64,000 nt of DNA, from positions 248,001 to 312,000 of the IMG/VR virus record IMGVR_UViG_3300018080_008436; one strand, written 5' to 3'. The notes under the pieces were generated by a model that was not told the origin of the DNA, did no database searches, and saw only the letters and a list, made by a program, of their open reading frames with translations. Below, piece by piece: positions 3,739 through 60,861 of this stretch. Each line of letters opens with the position of its first letter. The stretch's first letter is position 1. The position numbers and the translations under genes are program-made.

Positions 3739-3993
3739 TTATATACTTCGGTGCTTATTATTTGCAATCCAAGTTATTCCTTGATAAATCCCAGGTTTAT
3801 AGTAGTCAAATCGGTATTGTCTTTTGAGTTGGGCAAGTTCTTCATCTGTGAGATCTTCGAAAGTTTTTCCTTCTGGCAAAAACTGCTCTTCGGATCTCTG
3901 GAAAACATCCATATCCTTAGACACGTCATCGTAAGTATCTACAGCGTCCCTGGGTTTAGAAATAGCTGGTTGAAAACGTTCCATTTCGAACAT
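3739..3993 (-). CDS. Hypothetical protein
   Basis: ORF with GGAGG RBS. Confidence 0.6.
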   Translation of the reverse strand: MFEMERFQPAISKPRDAVDTYDDVSKDMDVFQRSEEQFLPEGKTFEDLTDEELAQLKRQYRFDYYKPGIYQGITWIANNKHRSI

Positions 3994-4023
3994 AATAACA
4001 CCTCCAAGTATTTATTCAATACT

Positions 4024-4965
4024 CTACTGGAGATACCCTAGTTCTTCCAAAAGTGCCATGGCCCTTTCATTCTTTGTGAATTCATCAATTCTATCTTGAT
4101 GTTCTGACTTCTTCCATTTGCCAACTCTATTGGATGAGATCTTCTTTGCTTCCCCTGCCCAGGCATAATTAGTTTTTACATTAGTAGAATCCTGATAATC
4201 AACCAATTCTTTCTCATATGGGATACCTATATGAGAACATACCCTCTGCAATGTCTCTTCTGGCTTTATTACAAGATCTTCATATTTGACTATCATAGAG
4301 ATATCTTTAAATTCAAGACCCTTTGTAACATCATTAACCCATCGATCTATATCTACCCAATATTGCCCAGGATGATATGGATGAACCGATGTAGTAACAT
4401 CTCTTCCATCTCTTATCAAATGTATAAGCTTTACATCGCCCTTGAATATTTTATGAATTTCATCAAAAACTAAGATATTTTTAGGTGTCTTTTCACACCA
4501 GATCTTCCCATCCATGTCATGTCCGTCAAGCTCTCTTATGATTCTAATAAGTCTTGTTGGATTTGGATAAAAGGCAAAAAGTTCTTCATCAATGGCATGA
4601 ATCTTCTCATGAGCACCAAGTATACTAAGCAAAAGAGTAGTCCCTGATCTACCACACCCTCCAACAATAACTGGAGAACCATATTTCTTGAGAGCCTCTA
4701 CCTCTCGATACATCCAAGTGTTTATTGTACCAGATGAAACCATCTCTTTGAACAACTTGACAAACAACTCTGGATTATTCTCAGCAGGCTTTTCGTAAGA
4801 AACTCTCCATGAATCTCCCCAAAGCCATTTCCCTCCACTCTCAAAATGAACGAACTGCGAAGAAGCCCCTTCCTCTATCTTATATATTGACTCACCAGGA
4901 TGAGTATAATATTTATACGGTTCTATTGTAAGTACTTTGTCTATAGAAGCTTTGGTTATTTTCAT
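4024..4965 (-). CDS. Sulfotransferase
   Basis: GCGRSGTTLL, EKTPKN, LIRDGRDV, VKYEDLV motifs. Confidence 0.85.
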   Translation of the reverse strand: MKITKASIDKVLTIEPYKYYTHPGESIYKIEEGASSQFVHFESGGKWLWGDSWRVSYEKPAENNPELFVKLFKEMVSSGTINTWMYREVEALKKYGSPVIVGGCGRSGTTLLLSILGAHEKIHAIDEELFAFYPNPTRLIRIIRELDGHDMDGKIWCEKTPKNILVFDEIHKIFKGDVKLIHLIRDGRDVTTSVHPYHPGQYWVDIDRWVNDVTKGLEFKDISMIVKYEDLVIKPEETLQRVCSHIGIPYEKELVDYQDSTNVKTNYAWAGEAKKISSNRVGKWKKSEHQDRIDEFTKNERAMALLEELGYLQ

Positions 4966-8141: not shown

Positions 8142-9280
8142 GAAACATCCTTTATAACACTATCTAATATTTTCTTTGCGACTCCACCTGGCTTAAACAG
8201 TTGTTTTTCCCTAACTTCATCAAATAGGTCTGAGAAATCTTTTGCCGTAACTCGATTAACAGCCTCTTCAAACTCTTCGAAGTTCACCTCATGATGTAAA
8301 AAGTCCTCAACAGAAGAACTCTTGGAACAAAGTGGACAATTATAAGGTTTGTCATATATCAAACTCGATAACTCTTTTCTTTTCTTATCCCTGATCTGTT
8401 TTTTGCAGAATGGGCAAACAATCCTATCCCCCAAATTAGCACAAAAATCATGATCATACAAAGGTCTAAAATTTCTCTCGTAAGGCTTGCAATTAACATT
8501 AACAATAGGTATACCCATCATAACGGCTTCTTTAATCGTTGAAGAACTGCTGTTAACCAACACATCACAAGCAGTCATTAACTCCATTGTCGGATGAGGA
8601 AACCACTTCTTATCTTCTATGTAGATATCCCCTCTCAGATCCTCTGTTGTCCTCTCTTTCGCTCTCGCTTTAACAACAACACAGTAATCCATCCTTCTTA
8701 GATAGTCAAAAACAACTCTGAAATCCACTATCCCGACATCTCTTAACCTGGGAACAATAACGAGAGCTTTTTTCTGGTCTTTGGGCAAGCCATATTCGCG
8801 GATAACCTCATCTCTATCAATTTTAAGATCATATTTAGGCAATCCACAATAGATATTCTTCTCAGACATAGTATTGTAGTACTTTGCAAAATATTCTCCT
8901 GGCATCACGATCTTATTGGCTCTGTTCTTATATAAATTGTGATATCCAGCATGTTTAAAATCACTCATATGGGTTAAAACTACGGTATATACATCTCCAT
9001 TTAAGAAATTAAGCCCTCTATTCTCTGAAACGAATACAGGAGTCCTAACACCCAATAATGCTCGTCTAGCGTTTTTATTGATGATCTCAAATCCATAAAT
9101 CTCACTCAATTGCCGTAAATTGTCAAGATTATCACATATGTTATTAAACCCTTTCTTACAGATTATATAAAAACGAGATTTTATCCCTAATTTATTGGCT
9201 TCTATTGCCATAGGGATAAAATATTTCAGCATATGAGTTTGTAGAACAACAAAGTTGATGAAATTCATCTTACTCCTCAA
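8138..9280 (-). CDS. GT-B fold transferase (TagF/sialyltransferase-like) with inserted CxxC..CxxC
   Basis: GLPKYD, DVLVNSSSSTIKEAVMMGIP; paralog of 10502..11488. Confidence 0.55.
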   Translation of the reverse strand: MRSKMNFINFVVLQTHMLKYFIPMAIEANKLGIKSRFYIICKKGFNNICDNLDNLRQLSEIYGFEIINKNARRALLGVRTPVFVSENRGLNFLNGDVYTVVLTHMSDFKHAGYHNLYKNRANKIVMPGEYFAKYYNTMSEKNIYCGLPKYDLKIDRDEVIREYGLPKDQKKALVIVPRLRDVGIVDFRVVFDYLRRMDYCVVVKARAKERTTEDLRGDIYIEDKKWFPHPTMELMTACDVLVNSSSSTIKEAVMMGIPIVNVNCKPYERNFRPLYDHDFCANLGDRIVCPFCKKQIRDKKRKELSSLIYDKPYNCPLCSKSSSVEDFLHHEVNFEEFEEAVNRVTAKDFSDLFDEVREKQLFKPGGVAKKILDSVIKDVS

Positions 9281-10505
9281 TGCCTGGAGATTTGTAATAA
9301 AATAACTGCATGTCTTTTCTCTGACATGTCAGCGGAGTCAGTTGAATGTTTTCGTCATATCTTCGATAATCTTCTGGCTCTATGCAATAATCAAACTTCC
9401 CAGTGTTGGTTTTGGCCCCCAACATATCTGATAACTCATAAATCAATACGTGCTTACAAACCCTTAATAGACCCTTCACTAACCGTGCCTTTTCCTCTCC
9501 TTTCGGAAGGTGCATAAGAAATCCCATACTAACGCCAAGATCAAAATAGTTGTCTTCATAATTCTCTAAGCAATATTTCCTCATGTCTCGACAGAAAAAA
9601 TGGGCGTTTCTATCTGAAAAAAGTTCCCTAGCTTGATTTAACGCTTCTTCACTGATGTCGAACCCTACAGCTTCACAATCATATCTATCAACAGCATACA
9701 ATAAATTTCTACCTACATTACACCCAACTTCAACGATATTATTTACATCAGCTTCATTGGAAATCTGATCAAAATAATCATACATAGATTTAGTTCGATC
9801 CTTTTTGACCTTAGAATTCAGATAGTTGCCCTTTATGGTCTCACCTTTGTATTTAACATACAAATTCTCTCCCCAATAATTCGCTTTTTTCTTTCTTAAA
9901 ATATAATATTTGTAAGAGCCATCTACCTCATCAAAATACTCATAATTAGGATTGAATGATTTGAATGATTCATCCACTTTCTTAATATCAAAAAGACTAC
10001 AATCAGCTTCATTAACCTCATGAGTTCCTTTATCAAATCCAATAACAATAATCCCATCTTCTTTTAGTATAGAAAACCACTTTTCTAAAGTAATATTTGG
10101 ATTTGGGGCGTGATCTAAAGAATTCGAAAAAATGATATCCCACTTCTCGTTCCAATCTTTTGGAAAATTCGAGAAATCCATTACGAAATCTGCATTAGAT
10201 TCTGGAGAAATATCAAGAGAACTCACAGAAACATTTTTGTCTTTTAGCCCCTCTCTCCAAACATCTCGTTCATGGTTGTTTCTCGTCCCAAGGCAGATCA
10301 TCTCAGAACCGTCTTCAACCAAATCATATATTTTGTCACAGCATTCTAAGTAATGATTTTTATCTCTCTTCTTGTAGGCTTTGGCCTTATGTCTTTTAAC
10401 CTGAGCATCAACATACTCATCTTGACTTACTCCCTCGTCGTAAAACCTTTTCTTAACAAAGTTAAAATCAAAAGTATTTTTAAATGCTCTTTTCTTCTTT
10501 CTCAT
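9270..10505 (-). CDS. Tandem class I SAM methyltransferase
   Basis: CLGTRN..FSNSLDH domain and EVGCNVG..GFDIS..LMHL domain. Confidence 0.75.
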   Translation of the reverse strand: MRKKKRAFKNTFDFNFVKKRFYDEGVSQDEYVDAQVKRHKAKAYKKRDKNHYLECCDKIYDLVEDGSEMICLGTRNNHERDVWREGLKDKNVSVSSLDISPESNADFVMDFSNFPKDWNEKWDIIFSNSLDHAPNPNITLEKWFSILKEDGIIVIGFDKGTHEVNEADCSLFDIKKVDESFKSFNPNYEYFDEVDGSYKYYILRKKKANYWGENLYVKYKGETIKGNYLNSKVKKDRTKSMYDYFDQISNEADVNNIVEVGCNVGRNLLYAVDRYDCEAVGFDISEEALNQARELFSDRNAHFFCRDMRKYCLENYEDNYFDLGVSMGFLMHLPKGEEKARLVKGLLRVCKHVLIYELSDMLGAKTNTGKFDYCIEPEDYRRYDENIQLTPLTCQRKDMQLFYYKSPGIEE

Positions 10506-17482: not shown

Positions 17483-18910
17483 TTAATCTTCCCACCATTG
17501 ATCAACTTGCTCTAGTCCAAGACCTTTTAATTCTTGAATAGTTTCTTCTACAGATTTACTGCCATAAATTCCGTATGTGTTCTCCATTTCTTCGCAAAAA
17601 CCCCCAACCATTTTAAAAACTTGACACAAATACTGCCTTTCACTACTTCCAGCATCATAATAAGAGTCTGCTAATTCTCCACTTTCCCTTCTAAAAGCAA
17701 AAGAGAAACAATCTTGGCTGAATTCTGGATCATATGGATCAAGCTTTGAAATACAGAAAACACATGGATCTACTTCATCCGTTTTTAATTCCTGAAGGAG
17801 TCTCGCATTTTCTTCTGCCTTCACCAATACGTTGAGATCAAAAAACATCTTCTTGACCTCTTCCAGGTTATATGTCCCACCTTTGATCGTAACGGTTCTA
17901 TCAGGCTCAATCGTGTAAAATGACTCATCCTCTTCAGGTTCATCTGGAACAACTGGCGTTTTGGCGAAAAACGAATCTGGATACATAAACTGCATCCCAA
18001 GACGCTTCGCAAAAGTCTTATCAGTTGTTTGATCTCCAACCATAATGCATTCACTCACATTCAGCTTGTATTTGTAAATATAAGGAATGGCCATCCCTGA
18101 TTGAGGCTTACGGCAATAGCAACTTACTGGCGGAACCTTATGAGGACAATAAGAGACCTCAACATCATTACAAATTGCTAAAGTTGCATTCGTAACTTCG
18201 AAACACAACTCGGCACCTTTTTCAGTCAACTCGCCTTTTGCAATACCAGATTGGTTTGATACCCCAATAAGGTAATATCCAAGCTTTTTATAGGCCCGTA
18301 AGACCTCTCCCGCCCCTTTCCTTACTTTGATCTCTGTTGGCTTTGTAGGGTACTTCCCATTGCCTCCAACAGTCTCCCTCAAAGTACCATCATAATCAAG
18401 GAAAATTGCTTTGTTTGTAAAACCCTCCCTTGGTTCCCTTCTGAACACTCTTTTCTCCACATTTTCAAAACCTTCGTCTTTCGTCGGTTTTTCAAATTCT
18501 TTCTTCATTTTGAAAAAGACAGAAATAGGGAACATGTTCGGATCTTTCTTAACTTCTTTCAGATCCTCTTTGTCATAAAACACCTTGCCATATCGTTCCA
18601 TCATCCTCTGCAAAGCATTAATCTGACAATCTTCCACAGAAGTTGACATCCAAAGACAACTGATCGGAACATCATGCTTCTTACACATCTCAATAAAAGG
18701 CTTGCGCTTATCTGCTTGCATAAAAGTGCAATCAAGAACAACAGAGTTCCCATTTTTGAGAGAAGCCTCAAGTTTCGGCAACAAATCGAGTGTTCTCCCA
18801 CCCTCTTTATCTCGGCTTAAATACGCATATGTATGCTTCTTCATGATTTCCTTTACTGCCGAGCTTTTCCCACTTGCAGGGAATCCAACCGTCATGATTG
18901 CTTTTTGCAT
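17483..18910 (-). CDS. Polynucleotide 5'-kinase / 3'-phosphatase (P-loop + HAD-IIIA) with C-terminal extension
   Basis: GFPASGKS kinase; FLDYDGTL, SNQSG, CRKP, VGD HAD motifs. Confidence 0.85.
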   Translation of the reverse strand: MQKAIMTVGFPASGKSSAVKEIMKKHTYAYLSRDKEGGRTLDLLPKLEASLKNGNSVVLDCTFMQADKRKPFIEMCKKHDVPISCLWMSTSVEDCQINALQRMMERYGKVFYDKEDLKEVKKDPNMFPISVFFKMKKEFEKPTKDEGFENVEKRVFRREPREGFTNKAIFLDYDGTLRETVGGNGKYPTKPTEIKVRKGAGEVLRAYKKLGYYLIGVSNQSGIAKGELTEKGAELCFEVTNATLAICNDVEVSYCPHKVPPVSCYCRKPQSGMAIPYIYKYKLNVSECIMVGDQTTDKTFAKRLGMQFMYPDSFFAKTPVVPDEPEEDESFYTIEPDRTVTIKGGTYNLEEVKKMFFDLNVLVKAEENARLLQELKTDEVDPCVFCISKLDPYDPEFSQDCFSFAFRRESGELADSYYDAGSSERQYLCQVFKMVGGFCEEMENTYGIYGSKSVEETIQELKGLGLEQVDQWWED

Positions 18911-29703: not shown

Positions 29704-30486
29704 TTAGGTTAAAAAATCTTTGTCAACGTAATGCACCATGAACTTACATACAGTATCGATAAGTTCATCAGGCATTCTTTTAAAACATTCGTTCACAAAC
29801 TCATCTGGAACGTTTTTGTAATATGCATGAGCAATTGAGCCAGCCATAGCCGCAATGGTATCGCTGTCTCCACCCATCATTACTGCTTCTCTTATTGTAC
29901 TCTCAAAATCCTCAGAATACAAGAAAGCGTATACAGCTTGCGGAACTGTCTCCTGGCAACTACAATTAAATCCTAGATGCTCAGAGGTCAAAATAAGGTC
30001 CGTTCTGTATCCAAACGACTCTACTGCTTCTCTAATTTCTTGCTTTGTCCCTCCATGCCAAGCTATGAATGTTGCCAAAGCAATTGCTTGAGCACCTTTA
30101 ACTCCCTCTTCATGATTATGAGTCGCATCAGCACTCTTTTTGGCCTCTGCTAGAACATCCTTTTTAGATCTGCAATAGAAAGCAACAGGGCTAACTCTCA
30201 TCGCAGACCCATTGCCATAACTATTATACCCTTCTTCTTGCTCACTTAAAGCCCACTCTTTGAAAGCACTACCATACCCTCTATCTTTGTAATTTCTATA
30301 GTATTCACGAATAGATTGTGAATAGTTTCCTGAATTCATCAAAACATCTGCTACTGCGCAGGTTAGAACAGTATCGTCAGTAAAAATACACTTCTTGTTG
30401 AATAGAAGAAAATTTTTGGTTTTGGGGTGTCTTTTTGGGCCTTCCCAACGAGAGCCTATTATGTCTCCTAAAATCGCGCCTATCAC
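29704..30486 (-). CDS. ADP-ribosylglycohydrolase (DraG/ARH family)
   Basis: GAILGDIIG, TDDT, GNGSAMR, GGDSDT; GTG start after AAAGGAGA. Confidence 0.92.
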   Translation of the reverse strand: MIGAILGDIIGSRWEGPKRHPKTKNFLLFNKKCIFTDDTVLTCAVADVLMNSGNYSQSIREYYRNYKDRGYGSAFKEWALSEQEEGYNSYGNGSAMRVSPVAFYCRSKKDVLAEAKKSADATHNHEEGVKGAQAIALATFIAWHGGTKQEIREAVESFGYRTDLILTSEHLGFNCSCQETVPQAVYAFLYSEDFESTIREAVMMGGDSDTIAAMAGSIAHAYYKNVPDEFVNECFKRMPDELIDTVCKFMVHYVDKDFLT

Positions 30487-31502
30487 AATCTTTCTCCTTT
30501 TACTCTTTCCTTTTCGTACCCTAACCAAACTTTCCAACTTTTCCAGCCTCTATCTTTATAAGTCCTATCTGGCACACTTGGTAAACAAACAGGTCTAGTA
30601 TTTTCTTTCCAATATAAACACCATTCTGTTTTGCTTCTTATTCCCAATTTATGAACGAATTTTTCTGCTTCTTTATAAGGCATAAACCCACTTTTTGCAA
30701 CTTTTATACTCCCCAAATCATAAAATTTGTTCTTTTTCCTTATTAAAAATAAATTCGAAGGAGTGTTATACATATATTCTCTTAAAAGTATCGAACTGTT
30801 CTTAGCCACCCTAACTCTATAATACTTCTCTTTTAAACTTCTAACATTCCCCCTAAAACCATTTATATTTTCTTTTAATTTTAATAACAAACCATATGAG
30901 AACTTCTCACTTCCACTAGTAAGAGATGATTCTATGGAGTTCCTAGATATAGATACATTACCGTCTCCGTCCCATAGCCCTCGTATAAAATCTGGCAGAA
31001 ATTCTTCTGGAACATTAGGCATTTCACATGTCAGGCTTTTTCTCTCAGTTCCACCTATTTTTTTAATTGATTCAACTAAATTTCTACAATAAATGTTCAA
31101 ATGACAATATTTGCTTCTTGTCTCTTTAATGGGTCCATCAAAACCCATCGTTTTTGCGATTAACTCTAATAGATATTTATCTTTATTACTTTGCGTAATT
31201 GAAAACAAACTTTCATAAATACACCCATCTGCCCACCAAAAACCCAAAATATACGCCATATCATGAGTCCATATCTCAAAGAAATCCTCATTTATCGAAT
31301 ATTTATCTCTTTTATAGGACATCTTTTTATACCCCATCCAATCCATGTACGAAACCCATTCCGACTTATATACTTGATGAGGACTGCGAGGAATGAATGG
31401 AGGTCTGTTGTTTTTACACCAATCTTCCCATTCTGACTGCTTTTTAAGACCTAATTGACGTACATATTGTCTTGCTTCTTCAAATAACAGGAATTTACTC
31501 AT
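30483..31502 (-). mobile_element. Free-standing LAGLIDADG homing endonuclease with flanking repeat domains
   Basis: AYILGFWWADG and FIRGLWDGDG motifs. Confidence 0.85.
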
Positions 31503-33684: not shown

Positions 33685-33762
33685 TGGTCGGGATAGCTGG
33701 ATTCGAACCAGCGACTCCTTGACCCCCAGTCAAGTGCTCTAACCAGGCTGAGCTACATCCCG
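33685..33762 (-). tRNA. tRNA-Pro(GGG)
   Basis: Loop CTGGGGG, C1-G72, CCA. Confidence 0.93.
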
Positions 33763-33811
33763 ACAATTATTCCGACACTTATCCCGACATTTTGTCGGGA
33801 TTCAGAAAAAC

Positions 33812-33926
33812 GCCAGTGTATTGCTCATTTATACTACCTCACAAAGTTTAGAATGCTGAATAGAACCTTATTCAAGTTCACTTTTAATAGTACTGTATGG
33901 GTGGGATTCGAACCCACATCTCTGGC
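33812..33926 (-). ncRNA. Permuted tRNA-like RNA carrying CAGCA module
   Basis: GCCAG/CTGGC ends, T-arm first (GTGGG TTCGAAT CCCAC), GAACTT-GAATA-AGGTTC-TATT-CAGCA. Confidence 0.5.
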
Positions 33927-33927
33927 T

Positions 33928-34003
33928 TGGTATCCCCAACGGGAATTGAACCCGTATCTGTTGGTTGAGAACCAACTATCCTAGACCGTTAGACGATGGG
34001 GAC
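33928..34003 (-). tRNA. tRNA-Glu(CTC)
   Basis: Loop TTCTCAA, CCA. Confidence 0.93.
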
Positions 34004-34010
34004 ATTAAAA

Positions 34011-34138
34011 ATGAGTCGGAAGGAATCGAACCTTCATTCCCTGGTTGATTTATTAAACATCAAATAGTTGCTGGAACGAAACTTATACAGTTTCACTTGG
34101 TTTTATGTCCAGGAGTTCTACCATTAAACTACGACCCA
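34011..34138 (-). ncRNA. tRNA-like RNA whose anticodon loop is replaced by a ~65-nt insert with CAGCAA module
   Basis: Intact acceptor, D and T arms, CCTGG/CCAGG stem, no encoded CCA. Confidence 0.7.
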
Positions 34139-34158
34139 AGTTGTATCTCTAATGAGAT

Positions 34159-34235
34159 TGGTCGGGTATGCAGGATTCGAACCTGCGATCTCATCATCCC
34201 AAATGATGCGCCTTACCAGACTAGGCTAATACCCG
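34159..34235 (-). tRNA. tRNA-Pro(TGG)
   Basis: Loop TTTGGGA, CCA. Confidence 0.93.
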
Positions 34236-34239
34236 ATAC

Positions 34240-34406
34240 AGAAGTGTTTTATCCTGTTAAACTATCCCCAACAAGATCGTACTTTAAGTCATCTGACACT
34301 AACTCATTTCTGACCCCAGAATATATTTTATTGTTTTGAATGTCAGTTCGTAACAACTACTTTACACTCTTAAGCCGAGGCTGGGACTCGAACCCAGATC
34401 TCTCCT
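34240..34406 (-). ncRNA. Circularly permuted tRNA mimic (YrlA-like topology)
   Basis: Order AGGAG, T-arm, CCTCGGC, long loop, GTTGGGG, D-arm, CTTCT. Confidence 0.6.
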
Positions 34407-34408
34407 TT

Positions 34409-34499
34409 TGGTGACGCAGACGGGATTCGAACCCGCAAAGGAATCTCTTCCTACCAGATTGAAAGTCTGGTTACTTCAGGCCAATTTGTATACTGCGCC
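34409..34499 (-). tRNA. tRNA-Glu(TTC) with long variable arm
   Basis: Loop CTTTCAA; AGGAA-GAGA-TTCCT extra arm; CCA. Confidence 0.85.
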
Positions 34500-34508
34500 A
34501 TTTTTTAG

Positions 34509-34626
34509 TCAGGACGGCTGGATTCGAACCAACTCCTTTAGCTCCTCAAGCTAAAATAAATATTGCTGTAGCGAACCTTATTGTCAAGTTCATGTTTATA
34601 ACGTGCTACCATTACACTACGTCCTG
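34509..34626 (-). ncRNA. tRNA-like RNA with ~47-nt CAGCAA module between D-arm and anticodon arm
   Basis: CAGGACG/CGTCCTG acceptor, TTAGC-TTGAGGA-GCTAA hairpin, T-arm; no encoded CCA. Confidence 0.7.
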
Positions 34627-34671
34627 ATGGTCTGACCCTCAAAAATCATAAGTCTGATTCTCGAAAAGTCA

Positions 34672-34750
34672 TGGTCTGGATGGTAGGATTCGAACCTACG
34701 CTACTCCTCAGTCCAAGTGAGGCGGGATGACCAGACTTCCCCACATCCAG
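34672..34750 (-). tRNA. tRNA-Pro(TGG), divergent
   Basis: Loop CTTGGAC, CCA. Confidence 0.88.
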
Positions 34751-34780
34751 ATTAAGTCTTCTAAATTTTCAAAGATCATT

Positions 34781-34856
34781 TGGTGACCCCAGTGGGAATC
34801 GAACCCAACCTTCCCAGGATGAAAACCTGGTGTCCTAGCCGATAGACGATGGGGCC
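34781..34856 (-). tRNA. tRNA-Glu(TTC)
   Basis: Loop TTTTCAT, CCA. Confidence 0.93.
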
Positions 34857-34865
34857 ATGGACAAT

Positions 34866-34931
34866 AAAAAAGCCCTCCTAACGCAAGCTAAGAGGGCACA
34901 AAAAAAGCCCTCCCGCTCATGGCAGAAGGGC
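34866..34931 (-). terminator. Two tandem intrinsic terminators of the Glu/Pro attenuator
   Basis: GCCCTTCTGC-CATGA-GCGGGAGGGC-T7 and GCCCTCTTAGC-TTGC-GTTAGGAGGGC-T6. Confidence 0.88.
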
Positions 34932-34953
34932 CAAAATCATAGTTATGATCTAA

Positions 34954-35031
34954 CTACAGATCGGCTGACCTCCTGCCAAAGGCTGGCGGTTCTTCTCGTT
35001 CTGGTTCTCGAATGTACATGTAGTTGTTCAT
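34954..35031 (-). CDS. Leader peptide MNNYMYIREPEREEPPAFGRRSADL (Glu/Pro attenuator)
   Basis: AAAGGA RBS; 4 GAA + 3 CCR within 8 codons. Confidence 0.8.
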   Translation of the reverse strand: MNNYMYIREPEREEPPAFGRRSADL

Positions 35032-35056
35032 AACAAATTTTCCTTTCGTTACCCCC

Positions 35057-35087
35057 ATTATAAACCATCCTAGAGACTTTTCAAGTC
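35057..35087 (-). promoter_or_regulatory. Promoter GACTTGAAA-N16-TATAAT
   Basis: Shared motif. Confidence 0.8.
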
Positions 35088-55187: not shown

Positions 55188-55278
55188 TGGTGGGAGTAGC
55201 AGGACTTGAACCTGCGTTTACCTTTCGGCCTCCTGTGTATCAGACAGGCGCTCTAACCAAATACTGAGCTATACTCCC
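55188..55278 (-). tRNA. tRNA-Ile(GAT) with long variable arm
   Basis: Loop CTGATAC; GCC-GAAA-GGT arm; CCA. Confidence 0.85.
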
Positions 55279-58916: not shown

Positions 58917-60350
58917 TTAGACGGTGACCCCTTCTGGGACTACGATTTCATACTTCTCGATTGCTCGATCAAGTACTGCCATTGGCGAGAAATCAGTGCC
59001 TCCGAGAACTGCGCCTAAGATTGAAGGACTGAAGCCACTTACAAGAGCAACATTCTCATGCGTACCTCTTGCAGGACTTCCTGCATATCCAGCAGTATTC
59101 CAATATACAATCTTTGGACGACTGTATCCATTTGCTTCCCACTCTTCCATGCATCTTTCAATAGTGGTCTTATCGCAGTTACTAGCGCCAGAGCACCAGC
59201 CTCCACCATTATCGAACTGCATGTCTGAAATGATCAACAGACAGTTTGGAATCTGTTCATCAGTTACGTTGAACATCTTTGCAGAGTTCAGGATCTGATC
59301 AAGAGCCGCCTTGACGTTCGTTGATCCACAATATCCTTCTCTTCTGCAACGCTGAATTCCCTGAACAAAAGTCTTTCCCTTCCAATCGACAAGGTGACTG
59401 TCGTTTGAGAATGGAATGAACTTCCTGTAGAAAGGGTTATCCTTTCCAACCCTGTCAGAGCAGTACAATCCCAAACTGGTTGAGATATCAATAGCTCTGA
59501 TAGAACCAGAGACAGTAACTCCCATAGATCCAGAGAAGTCACAAATTGGCATGATTCTCATGTTGCAGTCTTCCATGAAGTTTGGAAGAGCTTCAAACTG
59601 AGCATTTGCCAACTTACCATCCTTGTTAGCAGTACGAAGAACGTCATGTGGGAACAAAGCACTTGCGTTAACCTTGTTGTCAGAGTCCTCGTCAGTCAAA
59701 GACTCTCTCCACTGATCGTATCTTGCAGGATCATGCTTCAAGAATGCGTTAGCAGATCTTGCCATTGCGACAGAAGGAACAGTGTTGTAGTCAATGTCAT
59801 GCCAGTCGCCTGAGCACATTGCAGTCTCTACAACATTAGTGTACTCAGCCAAGTGCTTTCTGAATACCTTTGGAGACATTCCGAGAGCCTTTCTAAGCTT
59901 TGCGAAAACAACCTTGTTCTTCTTCTCTCTTGGTGCCCACTTGCAAGCAAGACCATGCTTATCAGCAATAGCTCTTGCCCAGTACTGGATTGCAGTATCT
60001 TCGCAAGGAGTATCGATACATGCAGTCAAGTCATCCCAACGTCCAGTCTCTGGAATAAGATGAATATTGACAGTAATCCACTCAGGATGCTTCTCAGCCA
60101 TCCACTTCAATACAGAACGGAATCCGCTTCTGTTACCTGCTCCACCTCTAGCATCACGAAGCCAGAAAGCAAGCTTTGCGGCACGAAGTTGATCGGACTT
60201 GAACGCAGGCTTAAACAAGTTCAGAGCACCTGCCTCCGAACCGTAGTAGCTACCACGCTTCTCGAAAAGTGATCCTGCCTTGGAGAAGAACTCCAAAAGT
60301 GCGTTTCCAGTTGAGTCATACAGAAAGTCGTTGTTGTGTCCTCTTGCCAT
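58917..60350 (-). CDS. TROVE-like DUF2828 + vWA protein
   Basis: WLRDARGGAG, GRWDDL, KWAPRE, VPSVAM, CDFSGSM MIDAS, ISDMQFD, VYWN, VSGFSP. Confidence 0.8.
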   Translation of the reverse strand: MARGHNNDFLYDSTGNALLEFFSKAGSLFEKRGSYYGSEAGALNLFKPAFKSDQLRAAKLAFWLRDARGGAGNRSGFRSVLKWMAEKHPEWITVNIHLIPETGRWDDLTACIDTPCEDTAIQYWARAIADKHGLACKWAPREKKNKVVFAKLRKALGMSPKVFRKHLAEYTNVVETAMCSGDWHDIDYNTVPSVAMARSANAFLKHDPARYDQWRESLTDEDSDNKVNASALFPHDVLRTANKDGKLANAQFEALPNFMEDCNMRIMPICDFSGSMGVTVSGSIRAIDISTSLGLYCSDRVGKDNPFYRKFIPFSNDSHLVDWKGKTFVQGIQRCRREGYCGSTNVKAALDQILNSAKMFNVTDEQIPNCLLIISDMQFDNGGGWCSGASNCDKTTIERCMEEWEANGYSRPKIVYWNTAGYAGSPARGTHENVALVSGFSPSILGAVLGGTDFSPMAVLDRAIEKYEIVVPEGVTV

Positions 60351-60381: not shown

Positions 60382-60447
60382 AAAAAAAAGACCAGTCAAA
60401 CTTGGTTCCGAGTCCCATCTCGCGTATGGAACAAAGTCTAACTGGTC
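60382..60447 (-). terminator. Long hairpin + T8 between RNA array and TROVE-like gene
   Basis: GACCAGTTAGACTT..AAGTTTGACTGGTC-T8. Confidence 0.75.
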
Positions 60448-60460
60448 AAAGTTAAAAATC

Positions 60461-60818
60461 GGAACAGGTTAGCAATTTTGGTTTTCATTTCAAGTGAAAG
60501 TTTTGGTTGCTGTAACTAACCTTCTATCCTAAATTAAAAATTTGAACAGACTGACTTGTTTTTTTTAGCATAAAAAATTTTGAGTTGCTGAATGCAGTCT
60601 TATATCAAATTGTTTTTCTAAATTTTCCTTTTTCTTGTTTTCAAAGAAACAAGTGAAACAGCTTGGGTTTTCCATCCTTTATTTCAGACCTCGATGAATT
60701 TGGGTCCTCAAATTTATTTTTAAAACCCTCTCGACTGGGTTCTCGTTTTATTTCTGTCAGGGCGACTCTGACGCTCGTTTTATCGTGTTTTTTGGTTGCA
60801 GTAACCAAGCTTTATTCA
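60461..60818 (-). ncRNA. Array of three structured RNA units with helix-(C/T)AGCAA-type motif
   Basis: Units 60461..60529, 60540..60610, 60654..60818 with covarying stems; third has ACTGCAA. Confidence 0.7.
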
Positions 60819-60830
60819 GTTGTTGGTTCC

Positions 60831-60861
60831 ATTATAAGGATTACGAAAAACTTTTCAAGTC
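60831..60861 (-). promoter_or_regulatory. Promoter GACTTGAAA-N16-TATAAT
   Basis: Shared motif. Confidence 0.8.

What the first reader, a model, noticed from the sequence alone, without database searches (positions are those of the whole stretch)
34011..34626. tRNA scaffolds carrying a circularly permuted copy of the TROVE-leader module
Seen: 34011..34138 has GAAACT-GTATA-AGTTTC-GTTC-CAGCAA in place of the anticodon loop. 34509..34626 has GAACTT-GACAATA-AGGTTC-GCTA-CAGCAA between the D-arm and an anticodon-like hairpin. A third copy lies in 33812..33926. The GT and ATA that flank the helix in the 60.5 kb units here join to form the hairpin loop, so it is the same module permuted, 26 kb away. 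Both scaffolds keep acceptor, D and T arms but lack encoded CCA. Inference: chimeric tRNA-like RNAs processed by tRNA machinery, loaded on the TROVE-like protein, and co-induced by the Glu/Pro attenuator, which would link the two systems.
Basis: partly seen in the sequence, partly recalled or inferred. Interest (0 to 1): 0.85.

Follow-up and report, generated by a model that had tools for sequence, protein, structure and literature searches.

The report
tRNA-shaped partners of a phage Ro60-like protein
A giant phage encodes tRNA-shaped RNAs whose anticodon end carries a rearranged copy of a small RNA motif found beside a Ro60-like (TROVE-like) gene in well over a hundred phage and bacterial sequences, so they are most likely Y-RNA-like partners of that protein rather than ordinary or spliced tRNAs.

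Summary
On the minus strand, 34138..34011 (E1) and 34626..34509 (E2) score as tRNAs (46.7 and 45.6 bits) with 64- and 58-nt inserts. A third copy of the module lies at 33889..33851 (E3).

The module is a 6-7 bp covarying helix. One strand reads AUA-arm-NNUW-CAGCAA; the other reads UAAAA-arm-GU. Upstream of the 58917..60350 gene the same parts occur in the other strand order, so the circular permutation is real.

That gene (Pfam DUF2828/DUF7788) models as a Ro60 ring plus vWA domain. A covariance model of the unpermuted unit gave 131 matches in 158 DUF2828 loci plus the window. All are on the gene strand, and nearly all lie within about 450 nt of the ORF.

Ten tRNA-like carriers from eight lineages covary in every arm. 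In one phage two of them sit directly upstream of the DUF2828 gene. Another phage has the same fold with a closed acceptor, which is the YrlA (bacterial Y RNA) layout.

My best reading is that these are a normal-topology variant of tRNA-mimicking Y RNAs that bind the Ro60-like protein. Binding, processing and absence of splicing are inferred; no RNA data were available. The unpermuted unit also resembles Dictyostelium Class I RNAs, but below Rfam's threshold.

The parts
34011..34138 (-). E1: tRNA-like RNA gene. It has a 7-bp acceptor, D arm, T arm and a 5-bp anticodon stem (CCUGG/CCAGG). The anticodon loop is replaced by the permuted module plus one extra hairpin. No CCA is encoded.
   Evidence: Rfam tRNA 46.7 bits with a 64-nt insert. 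Model R1 47.4 bits. Not called by ARAGORN.
34066..34106 (-). Permuted module of E1: UAAAA..-GAAACU-GUAUA-AGUUUC-GUUC-CAGCAA
   Evidence: Model R3 40.3 bits (this sequence is a training member).
34509..34626 (-). E2: tRNA-like RNA gene. The module is inserted between the D arm (after position 26) and a short anticodon-like hairpin (UUAGC-UUGAGGA-GCUAA). No CCA is encoded.
   Evidence: Rfam tRNA 45.6 bits. Orthologs in L049, L046, L052, L056 and L058. Covariation in all arms.
34561..34601 (-). Permuted module of E2: UAUAAACAU-GAACUU-GACAAUA-AGGUUC-GCUA-CAGCAA
33808..33926 (-). E3: structured element directly after tRNA-Glu(CUC). A terminal stem (GCCAG/CUGGC) encloses a T-arm-like hairpin and the third permuted module (33889..33851), and the element ends in a U run. 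It is not a full cloverleaf.
   Evidence: R3 46.8 bits. No homolog was found in other loci.
33685..34856 (-). tRNA array that carries E1-E3: Glu, Pro, E2, Glu, Pro, E1, Glu, E3, Pro. All six canonical tRNAs encode CCA.
34872..35084 (-). Upstream control region of the array. It comprises a sigma-70-like promoter (35084..35057), a 25-codon leader ORF rich in Glu and Pro (35031..34954), and two intrinsic terminators (34932..34906 and 34897..34872).
   Evidence: The leader peptide and terminators are conserved in L047 and L049.
58917..60350 (-). Gene for the Ro60-like protein (Pfam DUF2828 + DUF7788; PHROG 850 'RNA-binding protein'), the proposed partner of the module.
   Evidence: AF2 pLDDT 92. 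Foldseek matches to Ro60 2i91/1yvr/1yvp and phage phiLo Ro60 9l5y, probability 1.0, with a C-terminal vWA domain.
60655..60816 (-). Unit A: unpermuted module with a long insert of about 130 nt (AAUAA-AGCUUGG-UUAC-UGCAAC ... CCAAGCU-GUUUC).
   Evidence: Read. Homologous units are present in L131 and L132.
60543..60605 (-). Unit B: unpermuted module (AUAA-AGACUG-CAUU-CAGCAA ... CAGUCU-GUUCA).
   Evidence: R2 60.2 bits. Rfam Dicty_Class_I_RNA 20.6 bits.
60461..60527 (-). Unit C: unpermuted module (AUAGA-AGGUUAG-UUA-CAGCAA ... CUAACCU-GUUCC).
   Evidence: R2 57.4 bits. Rfam Dicty_Class_I_RNA 22.9 bits.
60382..60447 (-). Long G+C-rich hairpin followed by eight U, lying between unit C and the Shine-Dalgarno sequence and ATG of the DUF2828 gene. 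It looks like a terminator or attenuator.
   Evidence: Read. Equivalent hairpins occur in L131, L132 and L133. The simple scan did not flag it because the loop is too long.
60831..60858 (-). Promoter-like site (TTGAAA-16-TATAAT) for the unit A-C transcript. It has the same extended sequence as the promoter of the tRNA array.

Best explanation
E1 and E2, and in a reduced form E3, are non-decoding tRNA mimics. They act as Y-RNA-like partners of the phage's Ro60-like protein (58917..60350).

Shown:
- They have a tRNA body: a 7-bp acceptor, a D arm and a T arm.
- At the anticodon end they carry a conserved two-stranded motif. It is a 6-7 bp helix. One end is flanked by AUA on one strand and G(U) on the other. 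The opposite end is flanked by NNUW-CAGCAA opposite UAAAA.
- The same motif, with the chain ends at the other end of the helix, forms about 60-nt hairpin units. These stand in tandem next to DUF2828 genes in many phages and prophages.
- In some phages such a unit encloses a T arm, a closed acceptor and a D arm, which is the YrlA layout. E1 and E2 are that fold with the chain ends moved to the acceptor.

Inferred:
- The RNAs are co-transcribed with the Glu/Pro tRNAs and released by RNase P and 3' processing.
- The Ro60-like ring binds the helix and CAGCAA motif, as Ro60 binds the Y RNA stem.
- The tRNA-shaped half serves as a handle for tRNA-recognising factors, or gates the ring. This would fit an RNA quality-control or repair setting. 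A Pnkp-like gene lies at 17483..18910, and relatives carry RtcB.
- The three units before the gene are further partner sRNAs, and may also give feedback control at the terminator.
For: - tRNA scaffold.
- Conservation: ten carriers from eight lineages show 97% paired cells, and 22 of 27 pairs change on both sides. The module helix does so in 5 of 7 pairs. Slid controls give 34-49%.
- Helix variants seen: GAACUU/AGGUUC, GAGCCU/AGGCUU, AAACCU/AGGUUU, GAAACU/AGUUUC, GAAUCU/AGAUUC and CAGAUU/AAUCUG.
- Link to the protein: R2 gave 102 matches at E < 0.1 in the window plus 78 viral DUF2828 loci, and 29 more in 80 genome loci. All 131 are on the gene strand, none is inside the ORF, and most lie within 450 nt of it. 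The unit stem is 98.8% paired, and 7 of 7 pairs change on both sides.
- Physical linkage of the permuted form: in L158 two tRNA-likes with the module (1599-1713 and 1719-1827) precede three units and the DUF2828 ORF.
- L158:1719-1827 has no anticodon hairpin at all; the module fills the loop of a 5-bp anticodon stem.
- YrlA-type forms closed by the same stem and motif occur at L146 3962-4082 and 4243-4375. When re-permuted, the first is collinear with E2, including the anticodon-like hairpin.
- The protein is Ro60-like.
- Precedents: bacterial YrlA RNAs mimic tRNA and are encoded near Ro60 genes (PMC4201824). Thermus phage phiLo Ro60 binds Y-like RNAs encoded upstream of its gene (PMC12135203).
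Against: - No expression, end-mapping or binding data exist. No RNA run was listed.
- In the window the tRNA-likes lie 26 kb from the protein gene.
- The motif differs from the known Ro60-binding motif GNCGAAN0-1G (PMC4201824), so binding is inferred from gene neighbourhood only.
- In E2-type RNAs the hairpin after the module keeps a 7-nt loop, with U at the position of U33 in 8 of 8 sequences and a purine at 37 in 7 of 8. W_E2, L052 and L058 have a 5-bp stem. Decoding, or splicing to a normal tRNA, is therefore not excluded for this subtype.
- 34 of the 78 viral DUF2828 loci gave no unit at E < 0.1.
Confidence: 0.55

Rival explanations
1. E2-type RNAs are working tRNAs with an extra arm. The anticodon-like hairpin decodes (GAG here; UAC, UAG, UGU and others in relatives). 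The module is an added arm that recruits the Ro60-like protein for surveillance or regulation of that tRNA.
For: The hairpin after the module has a 7-nt loop with U33-like and R37-like residues in 8 of 8 and 7 of 8 sequences. W_E2, L052 and L058 have 5-bp stems and 4-5 nt variable loops. U at position 34 is frequent, as in phage tRNAs. L049 and both L158 copies encode CCA.
Against: E1 and L158:1719-1827 have no usable anticodon loop. The supposed anticodon changes between close orthologs that have identical acceptor stems: GAG in the window against UAC in L049. The same hairpin is present in the L146 YrlA-type form, whose acceptor is closed by a loop and so cannot be charged. E1 and E2 lack CCA, while all six true tRNAs beside them encode it. 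To my knowledge no tRNA with an arm at position 26/27 is known.
Confidence: 0.12
2. The inserts are introns. They are cut out, and the halves are joined by a phage RNA ligase, giving ordinary tRNAs.
For: Removing the 57 nt after position 26 of E2 would leave a canonical 72-nt cloverleaf (read). Relatives encode RtcB (L047, L048). The window encodes a Pnkp-like kinase/phosphatase.
Against: No cut within the E1 or L158:1719-1827 insert leaves a 7-nt anticodon loop with U33. The insert is far too short for a group I intron, and no intron family matched in Rfam. No bulge-helix-bulge motif is evident, though I checked this only by eye. The insert is not arbitrary sequence: it is a motif that exists as a free-standing unit at more than 130 other places. 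Its helix, loop ends and flanks are conserved, which excision alone would not require.
Confidence: 0.1
3. The motif is recognised by a factor other than the DUF2828 protein, such as a nuclease, an RRM-type or Hfq-type protein, or a host factor. Its position next to DUF2828 genes would then reflect cis regulation or processing of that mRNA.
For: Binding has not been tested. In the window and its close relatives the units lie between a promoter and a terminator just before the gene. The one protein shown to bind the look-alike Dictyostelium Class I RNA directly is an RRM protein, Rnp1A (PMC7919456).
Against: The units lie downstream of the gene as often as upstream. They also occur in tRNA-like RNAs far from the gene (this window, L133). 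The protein has the fold of an RNA-binding ring whose known relatives bind neighbouring small RNAs (PMC4201824; PMC12135203).
Confidence: 0.15
4. E1-E3 are decayed tRNA genes that happened to pick up a duplicated hairpin, and they have no function.
For: E1 and E3 have no orthologs in the loci examined. The E1 fold is no more stable than shuffled sequence, z = -1.2.
Against: E2 orthologs persist in at least five further lineages whose flanking DHH protein is 66-74% identical where read, and all arms covary. The same design recurs in unrelated tRNA bodies in L133 and L158.
Confidence: 0.05

Closest known systems
YrlA / bacterial and phage Y RNAs with Ro60 (Rsr) (Rfam RF02553; Chen et al. 2014, PMC4201824; phage phiLo Ro60 with Yrl1/2, PMC12135203)
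   Same: In both systems a ring-shaped TROVE + vWA protein is encoded beside small RNAs. Those RNAs combine a protein-binding stem with a domain that mimics the tRNA T arm, D arm and acceptor. L146 carries exactly this layout next to a DUF2828 gene.
   Different: The protein belongs to Pfam DUF2828/DUF7788 and does not match the TROVE profile. The stem motif is UUACAGCAA with an A tract, not GNCGAAN0-1G. In E1 and E2 the chain ends are at the acceptor, as in a real tRNA, and the protein-binding helix is capped by a loop, so they are a circular permutation of YrlA. They sit in a tRNA operon 26 kb from the protein gene. There is no YrlA match in the window, and relatives reach only 32 bits against a cut-off of 69.
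Dictyostelium Class I RNAs (Rfam RF01414; Kjellin et al. 2021, PMC7919456)
   Same: This comparison concerns the unpermuted units, not E1-E3. The shared features are:
- length about 60 nt;
- a 5' AAG;
- a 6-7 bp terminal stem that covaries;
- the motif UUACAGCAA directly after the 5' arm (Rfam consensus CCUUACAGCAA);
- a variable A/U-rich middle;
- an A tract before the 3' arm;
- a 3' CUGU;
- many copies per genome.
Full-length sub-threshold matches were 32.3, 28.8, 22.9, 20.6 and 16.0 bits.
   Different: No match reaches the 41.5-bit gathering score, and ten other DUF2828 loci gave none at E <= 2. The hosts are social amoebae, and the RNAs were reported as unique to Dictyostelia. Their only proven direct binder is the RRM protein Rnp1A. 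I could not check whether dictyostelids have a DUF2828 protein. E1-E3 have the permuted strand order.
Canonical tRNA (Rfam RF00005)
   Same: Acceptor, D and T arms and the conserved D-loop and T-loop residues are present, and the scores are above the gathering cut-off.
   Different: The anticodon loop is replaced (E1) or displaced by a 57-nt insertion at position 26/27 (E2). No CCA is encoded. ARAGORN does not call either.
Intron-containing tRNA genes (bacterial group I introns in anticodon loops; archaeal bulge-helix-bulge introns)
   Same: There is an insertion in or next to the anticodon arm of a tRNA gene.
   Different: The inserts are 57-64 nt long, they match no intron family, and no bulge-helix-bulge motif is evident. 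The insert is a conserved motif that also exists on its own.

Membership tests
tRNA (RF00005) | Cloverleaf with a 7-bp acceptor, D arm and T arm, scoring above the Rfam gathering cut-off | tested here: met
   46.7 bits (E1) and 45.6 bits (E2) against a cut-off of 29. The arms covary across ten homologs.
tRNA (RF00005) | 5-bp anticodon stem closed by a 7-nt loop carrying the anticodon | tested here: not met
   E1 has 64 nt in place of the loop. E2 has only a displaced hairpin after a 57-nt insertion, and its triplet is not conserved among orthologs. ARAGORN calls neither.
tRNA (RF00005) | 3' CCA and aminoacylation | not testable with these tools
   CCA is not encoded in E1 or E2 but is encoded in all six neighbouring tRNAs. 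Post-transcriptional addition and charging would need experiments.
YrlA / bacterial Y RNA (RF02553) | Encoded next to a Ro60-family gene | tested here: inconclusive
   In the window E1-E3 lie 26 kb from the gene, and only the unpermuted units are adjacent. In L158 the tRNA-likes are 700-900 nt upstream of the ORF.
YrlA / bacterial Y RNA (RF02553) | tRNA-like domain (T arm, D arm, acceptor-like stem) joined to a protein-binding stem | tested here: met
   The collinearity with the YrlA-type RNA of L146 holds after re-permutation.
YrlA / bacterial Y RNA (RF02553) | 5' and 3' ends paired in the protein-binding stem, with the acceptor closed by a loop | tested here: not met
   In E1 and E2 the ends are at the acceptor, and the module helix is the part closed by a loop.
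YrlA / bacterial Y RNA (RF02553) | Ro60-binding motif GNCGAAN0-1G (PMC4201824) and the Rfam gathering score | tested here: not met
   The motif here is NNUW-CAGCAA. There is no YrlA match in the window. The best in relatives is 32 bits against 69.
Ro60 / TROVE protein | HEAT-repeat ring plus a C-terminal vWA domain | tested here: met
   AF2 pLDDT 92 and pTM 0.91. Foldseek top matches are 2i91, 1yvr, 1yvp, 9l5y and 9kop at probability 1.0 with TM 0.5-0.6, and vWA domains match the C-terminal part.
Ro60 / TROVE protein | Match to the Pfam TROVE profile, or sequence similarity to solved Ro60 structures | tested here: not met
   Pfam gives DUF2828 + DUF7788 only. phmmer and hmmsearch against PDB sequences found nothing relevant.
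Dictyostelium Class I RNA (RF01414); applies to units A-C | Short terminal stem kept by compensatory changes, with the conserved 11-nt motif next to its 5' arm, a 5' AAG and a 3' CUGU | tested here: met
   The stem is 98.8% paired and 7 of 7 pairs change on both sides. UUACAGCAA matches 9 of the 11 motif positions, and AAG and CUGU flank the stem. The RNA ends themselves have not been mapped.
Dictyostelium Class I RNA (RF01414); applies to units A-C | Rfam gathering score of 41.5 bits | tested here: not met
   The best scores are 32.3 bits (L133) and 22.9 and 20.6 bits in the window. A second set of ten loci gave none.
Dictyostelium Class I RNA (RF01414); applies to E1-E3 | 5' and 3' ends joined by the stem | tested here: not met
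   In E1-E3 the stem is a hairpin with the strand order reversed.
tRNA intron (group I or bulge-helix-bulge) | A recognisable intron fold, and a canonical tRNA once it is removed | tested here: not met
   No intron family matched in Rfam. No cut within the E1 insert leaves an anticodon loop. Removing the E2 insert would leave a cloverleaf. I checked for a bulge-helix-bulge motif only by eye.

The most novel reading that the evidence does not exclude
The RNA units linked to DUF2828 genes and the Class I RNAs of dictyostelid social amoebae are the same kind of RNA. Both would be ligands of a Ro60-like (DUF2828-type) protein. Class I RNAs have so far been regarded as unique to Dictyostelia and have no known mechanism. 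On this reading they would be Y-RNA analogues, and the phage tRNA-likes E1 and E2 would be circularly permuted, tRNA-fused members of that class.
Probability: 0.3. Interest if true: 0.85.

Novelty: new variant of a known kind. Interest (0 to 1): 0.75.

Why it matters
Ro60 and its Y RNAs are a conserved but poorly understood RNA surveillance system, and bacterial Y RNAs are known to mimic tRNA. This locus adds four things.

- A very large, mostly viral branch of Ro60-like proteins (DUF2828/DUF7788) now has a candidate RNA ligand. The motif is simple and can be searched for.
- The ligand comes in three topologies: a free hairpin, a YrlA-like form, and a true-ended tRNA shape. That is a natural circular-permutation experiment showing which parts of the fold matter.
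- The tRNA-shaped form sits in a phage tRNA operon, so it would be matured by the tRNA machinery. This gives a direct handle on what the tRNA-like half of Y RNAs is for.
- If the resemblance to Dictyostelium Class I RNAs is real, a long-standing orphan RNA class gains a testable protein partner.

Tried and rejected
- Exact-pattern scan of viral contigs for the hairpin plus CAGCA gave one hit (L003). It lies in coding sequence with no tRNA, so it is chance.
- A D-loop...TTC...CAGCA pattern gave 39 loci, but nearly all were ordinary tRNAs whose T arm happens to read TTCGAATCCAGCA, or were coding sequence.
- BLAST against GenBank phages found only ordinary tRNA matches and no relative of the phage.
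- L006, a distant DHH homolog locus, has no tRNAs.
- I considered a sigma-70-like TTGACA-17-AATATT inside E2 as an internal promoter and set it aside. The TTGACA depends on the loop sequence GACAAUA, which is not kept in L046, L052 or L133.
- The module-only model R3 found no further permuted copies, so E1 and E3 have no orthologs in the loci I held.
- Sequence searches of the protein against PDB chains were empty; only the fold search worked.
- No RNA-seq run holds the region.
- The two original Class I RNA papers (Aspegren 2004, Avesson 2011) are not in the library. The three unnamed Class I-binding proteins therefore could not be checked.
- The protein atlas showed only viral clusters and gave no information on amoebae.
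Full report
**Setting**

The window is part of a jumbo phage. It is identical to IMG/VR contigs of 296 and 476 kb and to a 525 kb metagenome contig. GenBank phages hold no close relative. The window carries 20 ARAGORN tRNAs, an IF3 homolog, a DHH phosphoesterase, a PIN-PhoH protein, a RecD-like helicase and a Pnkp-like kinase/phosphatase.

The finding lies in a minus-strand tRNA array at 33685..34856. Its order is Glu, Pro, E2, Glu, Pro, E1, Glu, E3, Pro.

**Check of the observation**

Rfam's tRNA model matches 34138..34011 (E1) at 46.7 bits and 34626..34509 (E2) at 45.6 bits, both over the whole model. They carry 64 and 58 extra nucleotides at the anticodon position. ARAGORN calls neither.

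- E1: a 5-bp anticodon stem (CCUGG/CCAGG) encloses UAAAACCAAGU, the hairpin GAAACU-GUAUA-AGUUUC, GUUC-CAGCAA, and one more hairpin.
- E2: the stretch UAUAAACAU, GAACUU-GACAAUA-AGGUUC, GCUA-CAGCAA follows position 26. After it comes a hairpin UUAGC-UUGAGGA-GCUAA, a short variable loop and the T arm.
- E3: a third copy, GAACUU-GAAUA-AGGUUC-UAUU-CAGCAU, lies at 33879..33853. It sits inside an element that follows tRNA-Glu(CUC), starts with a T-arm-like hairpin and is closed by a terminal stem.

All six true tRNAs of the array encode CCA. E1 and E2 do not.

CAGCAA alone is not enriched, and a loose hairpin-plus-YAGCA pattern is common. The significance therefore rests on the full module and on its homologs.

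**The module and its permutation**

Upstream of the gene at 58917..60350 lie a promoter, three units, a long hairpin with a U run, and then the Shine-Dalgarno sequence and start codon.

Each unit reads AUAA, arm b, NNUW-CAGCAA, a variable stretch, an A tract, arm a, GUUC. The tRNA-likes read UAAAA, arm a, G..AUA, arm b, NNUW-CAGCAA.

This is the same two-stranded motif. The chain break is at one end of the helix in the units and at the other end in the tRNA-likes.

**Homologs of the tRNA-likes**

The flanking DHH protein led to syntenic loci. A covariance model built from E2 and two orthologs (R1) recovered the following:

| Locus | Coordinates |
|---|---|
| L049 | 9102-9220 |
| L046 | 9727-9843 |
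| L052 | 1678-1794 |
| L056 | 4622-4755 |
| L058 | 4672-4806 |
| window (E1) | 34138..34011 |
| L133 | 45-164 |
| L158 | 1599-1713 |
| L158 | 1719-1827 |

Across these ten RNAs 97% of cells pair, and 22 of 27 pairs change on both sides. That includes 7 of 7 acceptor pairs and 5 of 7 pairs of the module helix. Slid controls pair at 34-49%.

In L158:1719-1827 the module simply fills the loop of a 5-bp anticodon stem, and no anticodon hairpin exists. In L158 both tRNA-likes lie 700-900 nt upstream of the DUF2828 ORF, followed by three unpermuted units.

**The protein**

Pfam gives DUF2828 + DUF7788, and PHROG 850 is named 'RNA-binding protein'. Sequence searches against PDB found nothing.

An AlphaFold2 model with pLDDT 92 matches Ro60 structures best: 2i91, 1yvr, 1yvp, the Ro60/La/pre-5S complexes and Thermus phage phiLo Ro60. 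These matches have probability 1.0 and TM about 0.5-0.6. vWA domains match the C-terminal part. 'TROVE-like' is supported at the level of the fold.

**Link between motif and protein**

A model of the unpermuted unit (R2, from 20 units) gave two sets of matches:

- 102 matches at E < 0.1 in the window plus 78 viral DUF2828 loci. These loci share as little as 36% protein identity.
- 29 matches in 80 loci from bacterial and archaeal genome bins and isolates.

All 131 are on the strand of the gene. None lies inside the ORF. In the first set 45 lie upstream and 57 downstream, mostly within 450 nt and often two to four in tandem. The stem is 98.8% paired, with changes on both sides at all seven pairs. 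These alignments were fitted to the model, so the slid controls of 29-44% are the fair comparison.

This is the pattern expected of small RNA genes that belong with the protein, as Y RNA genes do with Ro60 genes (PMC4201824; PMC12135203). Because the units lie downstream as often as upstream, 'leader' is not the right word for them in general.

**Bridge to YrlA**

Directly after the DUF2828 gene of L146, two units (3962-4082 and 4243-4375) use the same stem and CUACAGCAA motif. They close a T arm, a 7-bp acceptor-like hairpin and a D arm. That is the YrlA layout, and Rfam's YrlA model gives 32 bits, below its cut-off of 69. L155 gives a similar partial match.

Going 5' to 3' from the D arm, the order is spacer, arm a, (ends or loop), arm b, NUACAGCAA, spacer with a small hairpin, T arm. 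This order is the same in L146 and in E2.

I cut the L146 RNA in its acceptor loop and joined its ends. The result is predicted to fold as a cloverleaf and aligns collinearly with E2, including the anticodon-like hairpin. E1 and E2 are therefore best described as YrlA-type RNAs with the ends moved to the acceptor.

The anticodon-like hairpin is present in a form that cannot be charged. That argues against decoding as its purpose.

**Most likely mechanism**

The shown parts are the tRNA body, the conserved covarying motif, its strand-specific linkage to genes for a Ro60-like protein, and the existence of all three topologies.

The inferred parts are:

- co-transcription with the Glu/Pro tRNAs from the promoter at 35084..35057;
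- release by RNase P and 3' processing;
- binding of the Ro60-like ring to the helix and CAGCAA motif;
- use of the tRNA-shaped half as a tether or gate, in an RNA surveillance or repair setting.

For that setting, the window holds Pnkp, relatives hold RtcB, and there are NADAR and ADP-ribosylglycohydrolase genes next to DHH in relatives.

I put this reading at 0.55.

**Rivals**

- Working tRNAs with an extra arm (0.12). In favour, U33-like and R37-like residues are kept in the 7-nt loop. Against, the triplet changes between orthologs with identical acceptors, E1 and one L158 copy have no such loop, and CCA is missing precisely in E1 and E2.
- Introns (0.10). In favour, removing the E2 insert would leave a cloverleaf. 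Against, the same is not true of E1, no intron family matches, and the insert is a motif with an independent existence elsewhere.
- Another binding factor (0.15). This cannot be excluded without biochemistry.
- Pseudogenes (0.05). This fits poorly with covariation across lineages.

**The attenuator claim**

Before the array lie a 25-codon ORF (MNNYMYIREPEREEPPAFGRRSADL) and two terminators. The peptide motif E-P-E-x-E-(E)-P-P and the terminators recur in L047 and L049, and in L049 E2 follows them.

Co-regulation of E2 with tRNA-Glu and tRNA-Pro is thus plausible but untested. It does not connect to the DUF2828 locus. That locus has its own promoter with the same extended sequence, CGACTTGAAAAGT...TATAATGG.

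**Resemblance to Dictyostelium Class I RNAs**

Permissive Rfam scans of the unit regions gave full-length matches to RF01414:

| Unit | Bits |
|---|---|
| L133, first match | 32.3 |
| L195 | 28.8 |
| window unit C | 22.9 |
| window unit B | 20.6 |
| L133, second match | 16.0 |

The cut-off is 41.5 bits.

The published definition of Class I RNAs (PMC7919456) is:

- a 5' AAG;
- a 6-bp terminal stem kept by compensatory changes;
- an 11-nt motif next to the 5' arm (Rfam consensus CCUUACAGCAA);
- a variable middle;
- a 3' CUGU;
- length about 60 nt;
- many copies per genome.

The phage units fit this definition feature by feature.

Ten other loci gave no match at E <= 2. Class I RNAs were reported as absent outside Dictyostelia, and I could not check whether dictyostelids encode a DUF2828 protein. 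I therefore give a real relationship a probability of 0.3. I found no paper linking Class I RNAs to TROVE or DUF2828 proteins.

**Verdict**

The object is a new, circularly permuted, tRNA-ended variant of the tRNA-mimicking Y RNA idea. It is tied to a large and mostly viral family of Ro60-like proteins whose RNA motif, as far as I could find, has not been described.

Noticed in passing
window 34872-35084 (-); L047 6840-7010; L049 8620-8810: A short leader ORF rich in Glu and Pro codons (here MNNYMYIREPEREEPPAFGRRSADL), followed by two intrinsic terminators, precedes the tRNA-Glu/tRNA-Pro array. It is conserved at the peptide level in relatives. It looks like a translation-coupled attenuator of a tRNA operon.
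   Followed up: partly
window 34240-34406 (-): The 165-nt spacer after tRNA-Glu(UUC) starts with a T-arm-like hairpin (CUGGG-UUCGAGU-CCCAG), as E3 does. It ends with a stretch like a tRNA 5' half (GGGGAUAGUUUAACAGGAUAAAAC). No family matched, and it lacks the CAGCAA module.
   Followed up: no
window 34409-34499 (-) and 55188-55278 (-): tRNA-Glu(UUC) and one tRNA-Ile(GAU) are 91 nt long, with a 15-nt hairpin-like insertion in the variable region. That is unusual for these isoacceptors.
   Followed up: no
L047 7880-8200: A relative lacks E2. In the same array it has two other oversized tRNA-like genes with CCA ends, one of them with an insertion of about 110 nt in the D loop. It also has an HNH endonuclease gene between tRNAs and an RtcB gene nearby.
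   Followed up: no
L047 8300-8385; L049 9460-9545: A conserved structured element of about 85 nt follows tRNA-Glu in relatives, at the position of E3. It lacks the CAGCAA module.
   Followed up: no
L115 328-500 / L063 148-320; L146 6055-6181: These are unpermuted units whose variable insert contains a T-arm-like hairpin (GGG-UUCGAUU-CCC). They are intermediate between the plain hairpin units and the YrlA-type form.
   Followed up: partly
L152 924-1004: An 81-nt RNA matches both ends of the tmRNA model (68.8 bits) with only 9 nt in place of the 302-nt middle. It is a minimal tmRNA-like tRNA domain in a tRNA array beside a DUF2828 gene.
   Followed up: no
window 35057-35084 and 60831-60858 (-): The tRNA array and the DUF2828 locus have near-identical promoter regions (CGACTTGAAAAGT...TATAATGG). 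The same TTGAAAA...TATA(C/A)T type precedes the units in L131, L132 and L133. It may define a phage promoter class.
   Followed up: partly
window 30483-31502 (-): A LAGLIDADG homing endonuclease ORF lies beside the DHH gene, at the position where relatives carry a NADAR gene.
   Followed up: no
L133 9003-9470: A gene fragment with a Cas12f1-like TNB domain (TnpB-like) lies about 3.5 kb downstream of the DUF2828 gene, next to a tRNA cluster.
   Followed up: no
L214-L293: DUF2828 genes with upstream units also occur in contigs binned as, or isolated from, cellular organisms. Examples are Ruminococcus flavefaciens strains, Halobacillus, Thermoactinomyces, Akkermansia and Woesearchaeota bins. They are probably prophages or phage contigs in bins, but I did not check this.
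   Followed up: no
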